Positions 53,444 to 64,000 of a DNA stretch of 64,000 nucleotides are shown in pieces. The DNA is from Ascoidea asiatica JCM 7603 (lineage: Eukaryota > Fungi > Ascomycota), in NCBI GenBank assembly GCA_001600695.1, contig BCKQ01000002.1:1075184-1139183 (forward strand), read 5' to 3'. Numbering within the stretch: position 1 is the stretch's first letter; every line of letters begins with the position of its first letter. A program made the position numbers and the translations under genes. The notes below the pieces were generated by a model. It ran no database searches. It was given only the letters and a program-made list of their open reading frames with translations, and was not told the origin of the DNA.

Positions 53444-55015
53444 TCATTTTGGAGCTTCAACATCTGTAAAACTTTCATCATCGGAATTATTTCTGGAAAT
53501 TGGTTTTGTTTTATCTAAATTATTTTCTTTTTCACTTTCTTCTAAATCATCATCTTTATCATCATCACTATTATAATCACATTCTGAACCACAATTTGAA
53601 TCACATTCTGAATGAATTTCTAAATCCATTTCTGATTCACTTTCTGAATCTGAAGTAAATTCTTCATCTAAATAACCTTTTTCTTTAAAATTATCAAAAT
53701 CTTTTCTTGATCCAAAATAATAAAGATTTTGAACATTAATTGTTGGCATAAATGATTCATCAAAATCTTTTGAATTGAACATATGTGGTGGATGAGAATG
53801 TGGACCATGAAAGTTAGGATGAGGGCCATTATGATGTTTAAATGGTGAAGGAGGTGGATGTGGAGGATGTGAAAAATCATCAGATTTTGATCTTGGACCA
53901 AATCTACCACCAAATTTAGGTCTTGGACCACATCTTGGTCTTCTTTCATTTTCCTTTTCAAATCTATGAAAATGATGATTATGAGGTGGTGGTGGTGGTG
54001 GTGAATGTGATCTTAAATGAGGACGTCTATAATGTCTGGATCTTGATTCAAATTTGGGAGCATGTTTAAAGCCAAATCTTGGTCTTCTTTCTTCTTCTTC
54101 TTCTCTTTCAAATGAATGAAAAGGTGGTGGACGAATATGACCATGTGGAGATGGAGGTGGATGTGGTCTTGATGCTGGATGATGTGGGGGTGGAGGAGGA
54201 TGATCATATAAATCATCTGAATAATTCTCATGTCTTGGTCTTGGTCTTGGTCTTGAATGATAATTTGAATGTCTTTCTTCATTTAAATCGAAAAAAGGAG
54301 GTGGGCCTGGGGGGCCTGGAGGTGGTGGTGGAAAAAAAGCATCTAATTGATTTTCAAAGCCAAATTCGGTTTCATAATCTGAATCACGTCCTGGTCTAAA
54401 TCTAGGATGAAATCTTGGTTGGAATCTTGGTCTTCTTTCATAGTGTTCACCGAATGAATGGAAACCTGAAGCTGGTGGAGGAGGAGGATGAAAAAAATCA
54501 GAGTTACCAAATCTATCATGACCTCTATCATGAAATCTATCATGAAATTCACTATGAAAATCATCATAAGATTTGCCATGAAATCCACCATGATGTTTAT
54601 CATGAAATCTACCATGATGGTCACCATGATGTCTTGGACCACTAAAAAATTGATATGATCTTGGAGGGAAATCATCAAAATCATGAAATCTAAAATCTTT
54701 AAAACGATCAGGAGTAAAACGGGGACCAAAATTTCTTTCAAAGTGATGATGTGGTGGATGATTTCCGTGATGACCTTTATGATGTTTACCTGAGGATTCT
54801 CTATGTTTATCTCTTTTTTGCTTTGAGTGTTTTAAATCATCTTTGTTAACCTTTTCATTTGAAACCATCTCTTCTTCTTTATCATTTGCATTTTCAGTTG
54901 GTTTTTCAGTGGCTTGTTCTTTTGATTTTTCAGACTTTTTAGATAAATTTGAAGAAGTTGAAGAGTTTAAATCTTTTGAACTTAAATGTTTTTCTATTTC
55001 GGAAATTGAAACCAT
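53444..55015 (-). CDS. Orphan His/Pro/Arg/Phe-rich low-complexity protein with an acidic Cys-containing tail
   Basis: 523-aa uninterrupted ORF with A-rich start context; FHD/FHG repeats, poly-Pro runs, RP repeats and CDSNCGSEC. Confidence 0.8.
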   Translation of the reverse strand: MVSISEIEKHLSSKDLNSSTSSNLSKKSEKSKEQATEKPTENANDKEEEMVSNEKVNKDDLKHSKQKRDKHRESSGKHHKGHHGNHPPHHHFERNFGPRFTPDRFKDFRFHDFDDFPPRSYQFFSGPRHHGDHHGRFHDKHHGGFHGKSYDDFHSEFHDRFHDRGHDRFGNSDFFHPPPPPASGFHSFGEHYERRPRFQPRFHPRFRPGRDSDYETEFGFENQLDAFFPPPPPGPPGPPPFFDLNEERHSNYHSRPRPRPRHENYSDDLYDHPPPPPHHPASRPHPPPSPHGHIRPPPFHSFEREEEEERRPRFGFKHAPKFESRSRHYRRPHLRSHSPPPPPPHNHHFHRFEKENERRPRCGPRPKFGGRFGPRSKSDDFSHPPHPPPSPFKHHNGPHPNFHGPHSHPPHMFNSKDFDESFMPTINVQNLYYFGSRKDFDNFKEKGYLDEEFTSDSESESEMDLEIHSECDSNCGSECDYNSDDDKDDDLEESEKENNLDKTKPISRNNSDDESFTDVEAPK

Positions 55016-55955: not shown

Positions 55956-58232
55956 TCAATAACTAAAGCATTCTTCATGAAAATTAAATCCACAATCTTC
56001 TGCCCAGATTCTAGTTTTTTCAACTAAACCTTTTGGTCCAACACCAATTACCCAAACATTATCTAAATTAGTTGAATTATTATAATTATTACTTTCTCTA
56101 CAACAAACAGTACCATTTGAATTAAATATTGGTCCAGCACAAGTATTTTGTATACACCAATTATATTGTGTAATACCTAAATTTGGTCTACCTTCATAAA
56201 TTTTAATTTTTTTAATAATTTCCAGCATACTCATTCCAACTTTTGTTAAATTTAAATTTGGATCAATTTTGAAAAAAGAAGTTTTTTGCCTTAATTCTTG
56301 ATTTTTATAATTATTATTATTATTATTGTTATTACTTAATAATGATGAACATTCTCTTGAATTTTCATAATTTTGATTTTCTTCAATATTAATATTAACA
56401 TTATCTGCATTAGTTCCTTCAATATTAGAACTATCGTCATCATCATCATCTTCATCATATTCATTAAATTCAAATTGTTTCTTACTTATCAGACTATGCA
56501 AACTTGGTTTTACATTGAGGAAATTTATTTTGCTATTGATATTATTCTTATTATTATTATTATTATCTTGGTTGTTAATAGGATATGATCTTGGTATATT
56601 TCCAGAATTAAAAGTTGAATTATAATTTGTATTAAAACTTGAGATTGTTGAATAATTAATTTGATTAGTTTGAACAATTGAACCATAATTATTAAAATCA
56701 ATTTCTTGAATAGAATTATCATTATAATTTTCATCTAAATGAAAATCACAATGTTCAATAATTGGATCATTAAAATCTTCATTATCATTAAATTCTTCAT
56801 TGTTTTGATCATTATCAATATCATTAAATGCTTCAGGATTAAAATTATTTAAATTTTTTATTGAAGTTACATAAACTTCAATTGAATCTAAATCAATTAA
56901 ATTAAAAAATCTAAAAATTCTTAAATCATTTTTATCTTTTATTACATAAATAATTTTTGTTTCAATACCTTTTATACTTAGAACTCTTAATAAAGGTAAA
57001 GCAAATGAAATTCCAGAACCTCCAACAACCATTAAAACTCTTGAAGCAGTACATTTATAATCTTCACAAAATGAGATTATATTTTTCTTTTTCTTTGATT
57101 GAATATTTATATTTAAAGGATTTTTTTTATAAGATAAAAATTTCAATTTTGGATCATATAAACCAGTTATATAATAATTTGAATTATTTATAAATTTAAA
57201 ATTTGAAATTCTTGTAATTAAAATTATTGAATTATCAGCAGGTAAAGAAGCAATTGTATATGGATGAGCTAAAGGACAAATAAATCTATAAAAAAAATTT
57301 TTTATTGGATTTTTATAAAATTTCATAATTCTTAAATGAGAACCAGGTAAAAAATTATTTAAATGATTAAGATTATTTAAATTTAATTGATTTATTGGAA
57401 TTTTAATAATATTTAAATTTGAAGAAATTTTTTTTGAAAATAAATTAATTTTAATTGTTGAACTTAATCTTAAAAAAATTTGATAAGATAATATAAGTAA
57501 ATTTAAAATAGTTAAAATATTTACATTTGGTTTTGAATGTAAGAAAATTGAAATTATTGAGATCCAATTGAATAAATAATGTAAAAAATAAAAAATTTTA
57601 AAATTTTTTTTTCTAAAAAATTGTAAAGAAGATATAATTATAATTATAAATGAAATAAATGCTAACCAACCGAAGATATTAGTATAATTGAATATTTTTT
57701 TTAATTTATTTGAAATTAAATATAATTTAAGATATAATAAAATATGTAAAAAAGATTGTAAAAAAATTAATCTTGCTAACCATTTATGAATTGGAATTAA
57801 ATTTAAATATAAAATATTTGGTAATGGAGATGGTCTTAAAGTTAATAATAATAAAGTTGGTAATAAAGAAGCTGAGACTCTACCTAATCTTTTTGCTAAA
57901 AATGATAAATCATTTTCAGTTTTTATTAAAGATAAATAAGATATATAAATTAACCAAAATAAAATAATTTTAAATATATTAAAAGGTAAAAATTGAACTT
58001 TTAAAATTGATAGCAGTTTATTTAAAAATTTATTTAATTTTTTTAAAGGTTTATTAAATATTTTTAAATTTAATAGATATTTTAATATTGGATAAATAAA
58101 TATTATTAAAAGTAAAGTGAGATATAAAGTTATATAACCATATTTTTGAGTTATACATCTTCTATAATTTTTATAATTTGAAGTTATATTATAATTTGAA
58201 CAGTCAAGAACTGGTATAAAGGAATAACTCAT
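55956..58232 (-). CDS. FRE8: Ferric reductase-like transmembrane oxidoreductase (Fre8 type)
   Basis: KRLGRVS..LTLRPSPLP..YL.LIPIHKW (heme His), HPYTIAS (FAD), GGSGISFALP (NADPH) and C-terminal FHEECF. Confidence 0.82.
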   Translation of the reverse strand: MSYSFIPVLDCSNYNITSNYKNYRRCITQKYGYITLYLTLLLIIFIYPILKYLLNLKIFNKPLKKLNKFLNKLLSILKVQFLPFNIFKIILFWLIYISYLSLIKTENDLSFLAKRLGRVSASLLPTLLLLTLRPSPLPNILYLNLIPIHKWLARLIFLQSFLHILLYLKLYLISNKLKKIFNYTNIFGWLAFISFIIIIISSLQFFRKKNFKIFYFLHYLFNWISIISIFLHSKPNVNILTILNLLILSYQIFLRLSSTIKINLFSKKISSNLNIIKIPINQLNLNNLNHLNNFLPGSHLRIMKFYKNPIKNFFYRFICPLAHPYTIASLPADNSIILITRISNFKFINNSNYYITGLYDPKLKFLSYKKNPLNINIQSKKKKNIISFCEDYKCTASRVLMVVGGSGISFALPLLRVLSIKGIETKIIYVIKDKNDLRIFRFFNLIDLDSIEVYVTSIKNLNNFNPEAFNDIDNDQNNEEFNDNEDFNDPIIEHCDFHLDENYNDNSIQEIDFNNYGSIVQTNQINYSTISSFNTNYNSTFNSGNIPRSYPINNQDNNNNNKNNINSKINFLNVKPSLHSLISKKQFEFNEYDEDDDDDDSSNIEGTNADNVNINIEENQNYENSRECSSLLSNNNNNNNNYKNQELRQKTSFFKIDPNLNLTKVGMSMLEIIKKIKIYEGRPNLGITQYNWCIQNTCAGPIFNSNGTVCCRESNNYNNSTNLDNVWVIGVGPKGLVEKTRIWAEDCGFNFHEECFSY

Positions 58233-58929
58233 TTTTGAGTATTATAAATAAGAATATGGATTAAGAAATATTGAATTTAAGAATATTGAATAGAATATGT
58301 TATAGAATTTTGAGTGCTTGATACTCGTAATATATATATATTATAAATTAATGATTAATAATTAATAATTGAATAGTTTTATTCGGTTTTAGAACCAGAT
58401 TGAATCAGGAATAAACACCATTTGGAAGCGAATACGAAGCAATAGATTGATTAGATAAAATGGATGATCTTGTCTTAGACTTGTGGATACTAGTGCAGTA
58501 GAAGTTATGTGTTCTTGGTCTAGTTTTATCTCTATGATCTATCTGATTTCTCTGATCTCTCTGATATATTCTGATCTATTTATTCTGAAATACACCTTTC
58601 TTGAGTTTTGTATGGGCCTGTCGAGATTCGAGGAGGTGCGAATTACGAGAGAAGAAACCGGGGCTGCTCCGCGTGCTCGGCCGCTGCCACCGCCGCCGCA
58701 GATGCTTTAGATAAGGCTCGGAGACTGCTTCCTACGGGCAGTTGCCGGATTAGGCAATAATCTATCAAAAGGTATAAGCACCAGACACAGACACAGAGAC
58801 AATTACAAGAAATAAAGAATGAAATAAAGAATGAAATAAAGAATGAACTATGGAATGAGAGACTGATACAGTTTATAAGGAGAAGAAGTACTAAAATGAC
58901 ATAATGAAGATAAATAACCTAGACCTGGA

Positions 58930-61900
58930 TCACAAGACCACTCCTGTTCCAATGGTGTATCCATCTTTTCTGAGAATAACCCTTCCAAGTCTTTCATCAT
59001 CTTCAAATTTTACCATCAGAAATTCTCTATTACCAATAATTTCAATCTCAACAATAGCACTTTGATATGAACTTAAATGTTTTATTTTCTTCTTCTTCTT
59101 TTTATTTTCTTCACTTTTATTATCTTTTGTTTTACTTATAATTTCTTTAATTTTATGAACTCTACATGGTACATTTCCTGATCCTCTAAATAAAATAAAT
59201 GAAGTACCAATTAATAATGGCATATCTTTTAAATCAAATAAAATTAATTTAATTTTATAAAATTTATTAATTAATATAATCTCATTCAATTTTTTATTTT
59301 CTTTATAATTTAAAATTAATTTTTCATTTATCTTACTTAAGAAATCTCCAGGTTTAATAATTTCATTTCCATTTCCATTACCATTACTATTTCCATTTGA
59401 AAGTAAAGCTTTTAATTCTTTATTCTTAAATATTAATGAAATATTATTATCTCTTTTTATACAATAATCTCTATTTTCAATTAAACTTGAATTTAATTCA
59501 TCTTTATTATTTCTATTATCTTTAAAAATTTTAATATTTTCAATTCTTAAACATATTTTACTTGGTAATATAATTATACTTTCTCCATTTTCAATCATTC
59601 CAGAATTAACTCTACCTGTTAAAATAATTTCATCTCCGGAATAATTCTCATTTCCATCTCCAATATTTATATCATTAATTGTAAAAATAAATTCTTCTTT
59701 TAAAAGTTTTTCTCTCTCATTTTTATTTTCATTATTAATAATTTTTGATTCTTCTTCTAATAATTCTAATAATGTTGGTAATTCATTTGAATACCATTTT
59801 AATAAATTTTTATCTTTTGATTTATTTATAACATTATCTCCATTTAATCCACTTATTGGTATAAATTTAATATTTTCTTTTTTAAAACCAATATTCTTAA
59901 TTAAATATTCATTAAATTCTTTTTTAATTAATAAATATCTTTCTTTATCAAAATTTACTGTATCTAATTTATTTATAATAACTATTAATCTTTTAATACC
60001 TAAACACTTAGCTAAAATTGTATGTTCTTTAGTTTGTCCATCAAATTTAAATCCACTTTCATATGATCCAATTGATCCATCAATTATTATTAATCCAATA
60101 TCTGCTTGTGATAATCCATTAATTAAATTTGGTACAAAATCTTTATGTCCAGGTGAATCAATCATAATAAATTTTGTTAAATTTGTTTCAAAATTTGTTT
60201 TACATATATCAACTGTCACACCTCTATTTCTTTCTTCTTCTGTTTGATCCATAATCCATGCTAATGCAAATGATCCTTTACCAATATTTGAACTTTCTTT
60301 ACTTAATTTATAAAGTAATTTTTTCTCAATAAATCCACAATCATATAAAATTCTACCCATTAATGTTGATTTACCTGAATCTATATGTCCAATAACTGTG
60401 AATGATAAATTTTTTTTAAAATTTCCATATTTAAAATTTTTAAATGGTTTAGTTATTTTTAAATTACTTTTTAAATTTGATAAATTTGAAGTAATTACTA
60501 AATCTTTTAAATTTTTTGTAAGATTTAAAGTTTCATTTATCTTTTCATTTTCATTATTTAAATTATTTGAATTTTTTCTATTATTAATTATAATATCATC
60601 TGGACTTGGTTTTGAAAAATTTTCTTTAATTTTATTTAATTTTTCATCTCTTTTAATTGTTTCTAAAAAAAAATTATTATTAGTAAAATTGTTTTTATTA
60701 AAATTTGAATTATAATCTATTGGTAAATAAATGGAATTTAAATATAATGAATTATTACTTATATTATTAATTAAATCATTTGAGGATATAACTTTTTGAA
60801 AAAAAATTGAAGAAAATGAACTTTTATCTTTCAATAAAAGTTTTTCATTTTCTTTATTATTATTTTTAAAAAAATCAATTAAACTTATACAAAAATTATC
60901 TCTATCATTATTTTTATCATTATTAAAATTAATATTTTGAAAAATTTTTGGCTCAGAATCATCTAATTTCTTTTGTAAATTATTTAAAACTAATTCTTTT
61001 TCCTTTTCTAATTCAATTTCCTTTTTCTTTTCTAGTTCTTTTGTTTTTTCTTTTTCTAATTCAATCTCTTTCAACTTGTTTGATTGCAAATCAATTTGTT
61101 CTTTATGTTTATCTTTCAGATAATTATTTAATCTATTAATTTTATTTATATCTGAGTCGTTTGGTTTTAGATTATTATTTTTACTTCTTGATAACCTAAG
61201 TGAAGCTAATTTTGATAATTTTTTTGTTGGAATAATTTCTTTTTTTGAATCATTTTGTAAATTATCAATTGATTTAGGTTGTAATTTTGAAACAGAATTG
61301 GAACTTGAATTTAAAGTATTATTAGATAAAGATAAATTATCAAGGATTGAGATGGATTTCGAATTATCAGAAGATCTAAATTTAGAGAAATTTGATAATC
61401 TATTAGATGGATTATTACTGCTATTAGATGAAATCTTAGAAGAAGAAACATTCAGTAAACTTTTCTCTTTTGAATTTCTTGATCTTGCCAATGCAACAAG
61501 TTTAGAAGGATCTTAAAACTGTTAGAATTAGCTTTTTTTTTTGTTATATAATGATAGAAATAATGATAAAAATAATAATAAAAATAAAAAAAATAAGAAT
61601 ATTAATAAGATTATAAGAATATAATTAAATTAGGTAAACTAAAGATTAAAAAATTAACATACTTTTTTTCAATTGAATTGAAGGAACTTGTTTCTTTTTA
61701 TATTTAGATTTTAATTCTAAAATTGTTTTATTTATATCTAAATAATTATACCATAAAGATTCTTTAATAATTTGATCATTTATACCAATATAATCAACTA
61801 ATTTTGGTTTCACTTTTGGTAATAGTTGAATAACTTCTTCTTCTTGATCAGAACTTATATCATCATAATCTATAAAATCATCATTTTCTTCAATTATTTC

Positions 61901-61957
61901 ATCATCATAATAATCATCATCTTGATAATCATTATTATTTTGATTAAATTTTCCCAT
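58930..61957 (-). CDS. HBS1: Hbs1/Ski7 translational GTPase; exon 1 61957-61663 is spliced to 61511 (long form, ~958 aa) or to 60662 (short form, ~675 aa)
   Basis: Exon 1 encodes the HBS1_N domain (IKESLWYNYLDI.KT..EL). Downstream: F.KPSPDD, GHIDSGKSTLMG, ERNRGVT, DSPGH, NKLD. GTATGT donor at 61662. Confidence 0.93.
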
Positions 61958-62571: not shown

Positions 62572-63306
62572 ATGTATGATTTTGATGAAGATGCTAATAT
62601 TATAGACAATATATGTTTTTCATGTAATAATGTAAAAGCATATACAGTACCAGCTCCAGAAGAACCTTCAGATCCAAATTCTGTATTTACTCAAGATCAA
62701 GATTTTGGTCTTTGGAATTTAGAAAATCCAATTTGGAGAGGTAGATTAGAATTACATGAAATTGAAGAAATAATTTCTCAAAATCAAGAAAATGTTAAAA
62801 AAAATCCAATTGAATTAATGAAATTAATTTTAACTTTATATAATTATGATGGTTCAATTTTTGCAAAAGTTAATTACATCATTGATGATATTAATTTAAC
62901 TAGAAATTATAATATTAAAAATACTTATTCAACTAAATTTTATTTAATTTTTGCTTATACTAAAAATATTAAAAAAATAGCTCTTGGTATACGTTTACCA
63001 ACTTTTGAAGATGTTAATGATTTTACTTCCTCATTATCTTCTTTTAGGAGGCGTTTAAAAGTTTTTGTTGATTCTTATAATGAACAACATGATTCTAAGT
63101 CAAGTAATCAAGATACTAATAGTAGCTCCAATGATAATGATAATCCTAATGATAGCTTTAATGATCTCTCTAGTGATCAGCCTAAGAGTACTTCTCTTAA
63201 AAGGCTAATAGATGATGTTACTCATGATGACAATGAACATAACAATGAAAATGAAGATGATGAAGATGATGATTTTGGAGATTTTGTTAAAAGTTCAAGT
63301 CAGTGA
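62572..63306 (+). CDS. NECAP/adaptin-ear-binding PHear-domain protein
   Basis: V.AY.VP, WNLENPIWRGRL, FA, S.KFY, ALGI..F..SL, and C-terminal DDDFGDFV gamma-ear-binding motif. Confidence 0.72.
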   Translation: MYDFDEDANIIDNICFSCNNVKAYTVPAPEEPSDPNSVFTQDQDFGLWNLENPIWRGRLELHEIEEIISQNQENVKKNPIELMKLILTLYNYDGSIFAKVNYIIDDINLTRNYNIKNTYSTKFYLIFAYTKNIKKIALGIRLPTFEDVNDFTSSLSSFRRRLKVFVDSYNEQHDSKSSNQDTNSSSNDNDNPNDSFNDLSSDQPKSTSLKRLIDDVTHDDNEHNNENEDDEDDDFGDFVKSSSQ

Positions 63307-63458
63307 TTTCAATGAGTAATTCTAATATATTCAATTCTACAATTTACCTTTAATAATTAAAATTTATTATTGTTCATACATATATCTACTTGTGTAATAT
63401 GCTTCTATACAATATTTGATATAAAATAATTATTATATAACATTTAGTATATAATATT

Positions 63459-64000
63459 TTAACTATTAAGAATATGCTTCTCATAAAATGTTTCCCATAA
63501 TTCAATACTTTCTTTTTGATTTTCAATCATACCTTCAAGATATGTTTCAACTGCATTTCTAAAATCTTCTGTTTTATTTTTCTCAAAATTTTTTAATTGT
63601 CCTTTGATAATATTTGAAATATTATCAAATTTTAATTTTATATTAATTAATTTATTTTCTGAATTATTTAATTCATTTTTAATCAAATTTAATTTATCAA
63701 TTTGATTTTTATGATTTTTATAAAATTTATCTAAACTTAATTGTTTTTTATTAACTTCAATTTCAATAATTTTTAATTGTTGTAAAATTTTAATTCTTTG
63801 ATTAAATATAACTCTAATTGATCTAATTTCTCTAATATATTCTTCAATTAAATATCCTAATGTTATCATATCTGAACTTGAATTTCTATTTAATAATTCT
63901 TTAATTCTATTTTCAATTTTACTAAATTCAAAAATTAAATTTGATGAATTTTTATTAATTTCTAGATTTGATAAATTTATTAGACTTATAGAAAATTCTT
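63459..64000 (-). CDS. VPS5: Retromer sorting nexin, C-terminal BAR domain (gene begins beyond the window)
   Basis: Frame open to the window end; TLG..IEEYIR.I.SI..F.QR and DFRNAVETYLE..IE.QKE.IELWETFY. Confidence 0.88.
   Translation of the reverse strand, partial: EFSISLINLSNLEINKNSSNLIFEFSKIENRIKELLNRNSSSDMITLGYLIEEYIREIRSIRVIFNQRIKILQQLKIIEIEVNKKQLSLDKFYKNHKNQIDKLNLIKNELNNSENKLINIKLKFDNISNIIKGQLKNFEKNKTEDFRNAVETYLEGMIENQKESIELWETFYEKHILNS

What the first reader, a model, noticed from the sequence alone, without database searches (positions are those of the whole stretch)
60662..61662. One gene, two proteins: a hidden in-frame distal 3' splice site in HBS1/SKI7
Seen: the phase-1 donor GTATGT (61662) can join a proximal AAG acceptor (61512) or a distal acceptor inside the coding exon. 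The distal site has branch TACTAAT (60685-60679), a T-rich tract and TAG (60663), and that DNA also encodes ..FTNNNFFLE.. in the long form. Both joins are in frame. They differ by 849 nt (283 aa), which carry two SKL.AL-type helices (SKLVALARSR, SKLASLRLSR) and S/F-rich patches; PSPDD and the GTPase domain are in both forms. Known: pre-WGD yeasts such as Lachancea kluyveri make Ski7-like (long, exosome-binding) and Hbs1-like (short) isoforms from one gene through alternative 3' splice sites. Inference: that switch is intact here.
Basis: partly seen in the sequence, partly recalled or inferred. Interest (0 to 1): 0.8.

Follow-up and report, generated by a model that had tools for sequence, protein, structure and literature searches.

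The report
Alternatively spliced HBS1/SKI7 gene, Ascoidea yeast
This yeast gene very likely makes two mRNA-quality-control proteins (ribosome-rescuing Hbs1 and RNA-decay adaptor Ski7) by choosing between two splice acceptors, an arrangement already described in many fungi, so this is a new example of a known switch.

Summary
Exon 1 (HBS1_N) ends at a phase-1 GTATGT donor. It joins in frame to a proximal AAG (958 aa) or to a distal TACTAAT…T9-AG 849 nt further on (675 aa). The genome (probably Ascoidea asiatica, inferred) has one HBS1/SKI7 locus and no separate SKI7 was found; Dom34-like, Ski2 and Csl4 genes are present. The distal branch point plus TAG, in phase 1 and just upstream of PSPDD or the equivalent place, occurs in all 7 comparable relatives. 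The long-only stretch is stop-free and keeps Ski7 motifs. This is the switch published by Marshall et al. 2013, so it is a new member of a known kind. One correction: the SKL helices align to Ski7's Ski3-binding helices, not its exosome patches. No RNA run was listed, so use of either junction here is inferred. One lineage quirk: motif S3 is eroded here and absent in A. rubescens. The scan had not noted this switch on other DNA of this genome.

The parts
61663..61957 (-). Exon 1 CDS (ATG at 61957), HBS1 N-terminal domain, 295 nt, phase 1
   Evidence: Pfam HBS1_N E 5.6e-13; only HBS1_N match in the genome
61657..61662 (-). 5' splice site GTATGT, shared by both isoforms
   Evidence: equivalent donors in relatives
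61521..61533 (-). Two overlapping proximal branch-point candidates, AGCTAAT and TTCTAAC
   Evidence: GCTAAC at the same place in two Saccharomycopsis-type loci
61519..61521 (-). Competing out-of-frame CAG; its use gives a stop after 103 aa
61512..61514 (-). Proximal 3' splice site AAG (151-nt intron; long, Ski7-like form, 958 aa)
   Evidence: AAG|AATC at the same site in L009 and L010, and the public S. crataegensis model P0002 uses it
60663..61511 (-). Long-only segment, 849 nt / 283 codons: exon in the long form, intron in the short form; no in-frame ATG
   Evidence: leave-one-out profile score 43 bits vs best of 300 shuffles -11
61477..61506 (-). SKLVALARSR = motif S1 / Ski7 helix H1 equivalent (Ski3-binding in yeast)
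61333..61356 (-).
61186..61215 (-). SKLASLRLSR = Ski7 helix H3 equivalent
60799..60822 (-). SSFSSIFF, weakly conserved hydrophobic patch; possible exosome patch-2 equivalent (uncertain)
   Evidence: assignment is inference
60721..60744 (-). YLNSIYLP = hydrophobic half of motif S2 / exosome patch 3 (yeast LLGIFVP)
60679..60685 (-). Distal branch point TACTAAT, also read as codons for F-T-N in the long form
60663..60673 (-). T9 tract and distal 3' splice site TAG (1000-nt intron; short, Hbs1-like form, 675 aa)
60586..60624 (-). ENFSKPSPDDIII = motif S3 / patch 4, in both forms; lacks the usual downstream AQ
58930..60662 (-). Shared downstream exon: S3, linker and translational GTPase (G1 GHIDSGKST, G3 DSPGH with the catalytic His, G4 NKLD), stop at 58930
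   Evidence: Pfam GTP_EFTU E 5.7e-47, GTP-eEF1A_C E 2.3e-12; motifs

Best explanation
A single unduplicated HBS1/SKI7 gene is spliced from one donor to either of two acceptors. SHOWN in sequence: both joins are in frame, the segment between them is coding and carries Ski7-type motifs, and the distal signals are conserved. [quoted passage not shown] A weak proximal site (non-consensus branch point, AAG, a competing out-of-frame CAG) probably lets the spliceosome pass on to the distal site part of the time; that last step is inference.
For: In-frame joins. Distal RCTAAY + TAG, phase 1, 9-17 codons before PSPDD (or at the equivalent place in A. rubescens) in 7 of 7 comparable relatives, with identical spacing in A. 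rubescens. A TN/AN dipeptide, the protein imprint of the branch point, lies 8-26 aa before SPDD in 87 of 87 distinct long forms vs 40 of 435 control windows; all 7 DNA loci use the CT-AAY codons a branch point needs (product of codon frequencies 5e-4, species not independent). A profile of the long-only segment plus S3 finds only S. cerevisiae Ski7 in the PDB (E 7.9e-11 for full length), colinear over residues 1-225. One locus in the genome; Ski2, Csl4, Dom34-like genes present. A Debaryomyces-type short form joined at the equivalent distal site exists as a contiguous ORF on a Logan contig. Both acceptors RT-PCR-confirmed and isoforms functionally separated in L. kluyveri (PMC3597508).
Against: No RNA run for this gene was listed, so neither junction was seen. 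The distal branch point is TACTAAT, while this genome's donors are enriched for a downstream TRCTAAC (37 vs 17 control) and not TRCTAAT (26 vs 37); the pattern TACTAAY…T6AG is not enriched genome-wide (16 vs 38). Profiles without S3 (A2, A3) and the window segment alone did not find Ski7, so the H1-H3 match leans on the S3 anchor and on the published alignment. S3 is eroded here. Ski3 and Ski8 genes were not searched.
Confidence: 0.9

Rival explanations
1. Only the proximal acceptor is used; the distal site is decaying (C-to-T drift in the branch point) and one long protein does both jobs.
For: TACTAAT is not the enriched branch-point class here; public models of A. rubescens and S. crataegensis show only the long form.
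Against: The T9-AG tract and spacing match A. rubescens, which has perfect TACTAAC; UACUAAU is the listed distal branch point in C. dubliniensis and TGCTAAT in W. ciferrii; the L. kluyveri long form cannot do Hbs1's job; gene models usually list one isoform.
Confidence: 0.05
2. Only the distal acceptor is used; the long-only segment is plain intron, or a Ski7-like protein comes from an internal promoter as in Candida albicans.
For: The proximal site is weak (TTCTAAC, AAG, competing CAG); C. albicans uses an internal start.
Against: 283 stop-free codons in 81% A+T DNA (0 of 20,000 shuffles) with conserved motifs; no in-frame ATG anywhere in the segment, whereas the Candida mechanism needs a Met at S1; the AAG acceptor is conserved in two Saccharomycopsis-type loci.
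Confidence: 0.03
3. Both forms are made, but the long form has lost the exosome link in Ascoidea and keeps only Ski3 binding.
For: The window has NR where 83 of 89 distinct homologous S3 motifs have AQ and all 89 have Q or R second with a different first residue; A. rubescens has no SPDD in any frame; the basic KRK half of S2 is absent in the four Ascoideales-type sequences.
Against: F-x-x-PSPDD and LNSIYLP are intact in the window; single-patch mutants of yeast Ski7 still bind the exosome (PMC4942675); Csl4 and Ski2 are present.
Confidence: 0.08

Closest known systems
Lachancea kluyveri SKI7/HBS1 alternative 3' splice sites (Marshall et al. 2013, PMC3597508; confirmed by RNA-seq in early-diverging Saccharomycotina, PMC7491326)
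   Same: Single gene; exon 1 = Hbs1 N-domain; GUAUGU donor; two in-frame acceptors; S1 and S2 between them; distal site just upstream of S3; weak proximal and stronger distal branch point; GTPase with the G3 His.
   Different: Longer alternative segment with a K/E-rich insert (849 nt vs 591-705 nt in four relatives; 1005 nt in A. rubescens); proximal acceptor is AAG, not YAG; distal branch point TACTAAT; S2 lacks its basic half; S3 lacks AQ; not yet shown by RNA in this species.
Saccharomyces cerevisiae Ski7 (PDB 5JEA, 5G06, 8QCA, 8QCF) and Hbs1, separate post-WGD genes
   Same: Order of H1, H2, H3, patch 3 and patch 4 motifs is colinear with Ski7 1-225.
   Different: There two intronless paralogues; here one gene, and the long form keeps the Hbs1 N-domain and an Hbs1-type GTPase.
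Candida albicans-type HBS1/SKI7 (internal transcription start)
   Same: Same distal acceptor position.
   Different: C. albicans has no proximal acceptor and starts Ski7 at a Met in S1; here there is no such Met and a proximal acceptor exists.

Membership tests
Alternatively spliced ascomycete SKI7/HBS1 gene | Single locus, no separate SKI7 paralogue | tested here: met
   GTPase search finds only this locus plus two eEF1A, eRF3-like and three mitochondrial-type GTPases; one HBS1_N; Ski7-N profile one match. A very divergent copy could be missed.
Alternatively spliced ascomycete SKI7/HBS1 gene | Exon 1 encodes the Hbs1 N-terminal domain and is shared | tested here: met
Alternatively spliced ascomycete SKI7/HBS1 gene | Two in-frame 3' splice sites, each with a branch point, the distal one just upstream of motif S3 | tested here: met
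Alternatively spliced ascomycete SKI7/HBS1 gene | Motifs S1 and S2 encoded between the two acceptors | tested here: met
   S1 clear; S2 keeps its hydrophobic half only
Alternatively spliced ascomycete SKI7/HBS1 gene | Hbs1-type GTPase with G1-G4 and the G3 His | tested here: met
Alternatively spliced ascomycete SKI7/HBS1 gene | Both junctions present in mRNA | not testable with these tools
   no RNA run listed, so read laying had no run to use
Alternatively spliced ascomycete SKI7/HBS1 gene | Long form complements ski7-delta, short form complements hbs1-delta | not testable with these tools
   bench experiment
Ski7 N-terminal adaptor region | Sequence similarity to S. cerevisiae Ski7 1-225 independent of the shared S3 motif | tested here: inconclusive
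   hit with S3 included (46 bits for 1-225 vs 33 bits for the fragment lacking H1-H3); no hit without S3
Candida albicans-type internal-start HBS1/SKI7 | Met at the start of motif S1 and no proximal acceptor | tested here: not met
   no in-frame ATG in the long-only segment; proximal acceptor present

The most novel reading that the evidence does not exclude
In Ascoidea the splice switch is kept while motif S3 (patch 4 / helix H7, which contacts Csl4 and Ski2 and is described as universal in Ski7 proteins) is decaying: AQ is lost here and the whole PSPDD is missing in A. rubescens. The long isoform may therefore couple Ski complex and exosome without that anchor, a natural deletion test of the motif.
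Probability: 0.2. Interest if true: 0.45.

Novelty: new member of a known kind. Interest (0 to 1): 0.2.

Why it matters
It corrects the gene model (two products instead of one) and extends a published, very old splicing switch to the Ascoideales, for which two full-text searches found no paper mentioning it. It is a neat case of a branch point and acceptor written inside coding DNA. It does not open a new mechanism. The only part a specialist might follow up is the erosion of motif S3 in Ascoidea.

Tried and rejected
The look-up of sequencing runs (rna) listed no run, so no reads were laid. The PNAS 2018 paper PMC6055164 is not held. The window's segment alone found no Ski7 in the PDB; profiles without S3 found none either. 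Genome-wide enrichment of the distal-site pattern gave no support. The AlphaFold model is low-confidence (pLDDT 63, pTM 0.30) and is used only as consistent with short helices in disorder. Nadsonia (L015) has extra introns and was left out of the 7-locus count; no proximal acceptor was assigned for Babjeviella or C. boidinii. Cluster listings showed no Ascoidea or Saccharomycopsis short isoform. Rejected: internal-promoter mechanism (no Met), intron retention or the CAG at 61519 as sources of a full protein (both stop after 103 aa), chance ORF. The large protein search was not used.

Full report
Setting. The window is C2:1075184-1139183 of a 20.3-Mb, 71-contig, very A+T-rich genome. The best homologue of the gene is from Ascoidea rubescens (57% identity), then Saccharomycopsis crataegensis; the neighbours (NECAP/DUF1681 divergent, then Vps5) are syntenic with A. 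rubescens. The A. asiatica assembly has 71 records (PMC6041473), so the source is probably A. asiatica. That is an inference, not a tool identification.

Observation. On the minus strand, exon 1 runs from ATG 61957 to 61663 (295 nt, phase 1) and matches Pfam HBS1_N. GTATGT at 61662 is the only consensus donor in the gene. Joining to 61511 (after TTCTAAC…AAG) gives 958 aa; joining to 60662 (after TACTAAT, nine T, AG) gives 675 aa; the difference is 849 nt. Thirty AGs in the region allow an in-frame join, but only the proximal and distal ones sit directly behind a branch-point-like sequence. The 849 nt are coding: open in one frame, 22 and 63 stops in the other two, never open in 20,000 shuffles, and a profile made from 19 relatives without the window scores it 43 bits against -11 for the best shuffle (13 vs -5 with the three closest relatives also removed). 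A distal-type site appeared once in 138 kb of other coding DNA. Against that, the pattern is not enriched genome-wide and the genome's favoured branch point is TACTAAC, not TACTAAT, so the site's local sequence is suggestive, not sufficient.

Conservation decides it. In A. rubescens, S. crataegensis, a Saccharomycopsis-like Logan contig, Babjeviella, Wickerhamomyces ciferrii, Candida boidinii and Clavispora, a branch point RCTAAY followed by TAG lies in the coding frame, in phase 1, shortly before PSPDD or its equivalent position. In A. rubescens it is a perfect TACTAAC with the same 23-nt spacing to a T-rich TAG. The branch point leaves a TN/AN imprint on the protein: 87 of 87 distinct long forms have it 8-26 residues before SPDD, against 9% of control windows (relatives share ancestry, so this is not 87 independent events). 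The proximal AAG acceptor is shared with both Saccharomycopsis-type loci, and the public S. crataegensis model uses it. A 600-aa Debaryomyces-type short form joined at the equivalent distal site is encoded without intron on a 1,930-nt Logan contig, probably a cDNA contig (run type not checked). An earlier scan note says about one intron in four in this genome ends in AAG (s1-616483); AAG ends are visible among the intron-like matches.

What the long-only segment is. A profile of this segment plus S3 from 20 yeasts retrieves only S. cerevisiae Ski7 from the PDB, colinear over residues 1-225. SKLVALARSR aligns with Ski7 1-12, SISILDNL with 29-34 and SKLASLRLSR with 76-87, the helices H1, H2 and H3 that bind Ski3 (PMC10659929). 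YLNSIYLP aligns with ELLGIFVP, exosome patch 3; ENFSKPSPDD with patch 4 (PMC4942675). These are motifs S1, S2 and S3 of Marshall et al.. Without S3 the profiles do not reach Ski7 on their own, so the H1-H3 assignment rests on colinearity and the published alignment. A low-confidence model shows helices at H1, H3, S2 and S3 and a long K/E-rich helix specific to this sequence.

Genome context. The locus is the only HBS1-like gene and the only match to the Ski7-N profile. Ski2, Csl4 and a Dom34-like eRF1_1 protein without NIKS/GGQ are present, so both predicted products have partners. Ski3 and Ski8 were not searched.

Mechanism. Shown: two in-frame acceptors, coding alternative segment, Ski7 motifs in it, intact Hbs1-type GTPase. 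Inferred from L. kluyveri, where RT-PCR, western blot and complementation showed long = Ski7 and short = Hbs1 (PMC3597508): the same division here. Inferred further: a weak proximal site allows use of the distal one, as the published table shows non-consensus proximal and consensus distal branch points. The CAG at 61519 and intron retention both stop after 103 aa and would be unproductive. The C. albicans route (internal start at a Met in S1) is excluded by the lack of any in-frame ATG.

Known versus new. The switch is reported across Ascomycota and dated to over 590 million years. No held paper names Ascoidea or Saccharomycopsis with Ski7, so this is an unreported member. The one departure is motif S3: the window reads PSPDDIIINNR where 83 of 89 distinct homologous motifs have AQ, and A. 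rubescens has no SPDD in any frame; two other proteins in the list also lack it (P0086, and Nadsonia P0112, possibly a gene-model problem). Patch 4 is described as universally conserved in SKI7 orthologues but not needed for exosome recruitment in human cells (PMC6143672).

Limits. No RNA run was listed, so junction use in this species is unobserved. Spliced models were searched exon by exon by reference; the joined step was left out of all searches.

Verdict.

Noticed in passing
L008:5514-5700 (Ascoidea rubescens HBS1/SKI7): Keeps a perfect distal branch point and TAG but has no PSPDD (S3/patch 4) in any frame; one of only 3 of 120 homologues without it.
   Followed up: partly
window 61455, 61119, 59019 (first base of codon, minus strand): Three CTG codons in the gene's second exon, two in the long-only segment, none in a conserved motif; in A. 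asiatica CUG is read as Ser or Leu (PMC6041473).
   Followed up: partly
window 60960-61160, minus strand: K/E-rich stretch with short internal repeats (EIELEKEK twice), absent from relatives; predicted as one long helix.
   Followed up: no
window 53444-55015, minus strand: 523-aa His/Pro/Arg/Phe-rich ORF with no Pfam match, much higher in G+C codons than its neighbours.
   Followed up: partly
window 55956-58232, minus strand: Ferric-reductase-like membrane protein (Ferric_reduct, weak FAD_binding_8) directly downstream of HBS1.
   Followed up: partly
window 58600-58800: G+C-rich island (55% in a 20% background) between the HBS1 stop and the reductase start; a 12-nt unit (TTCATTCTTTAT) is repeated three times just upstream at about 58810-58850.
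   Followed up: no
window 62572-64000; L008; L013: HBS1 and NECAP/DUF1681 are a divergent pair here, in A. rubescens and in W. ciferrii; the 3' end of a Vps5 gene follows, as in A. rubescens.
   Followed up: partly
L009:3221-3335, L010:2673-2783, L013:1714-1809, L016:2149-2233: Several relatives appear to have an extra short intron and mini-exon upstream of the alternative intron, which the window and A. rubescens lack.
   Followed up: no
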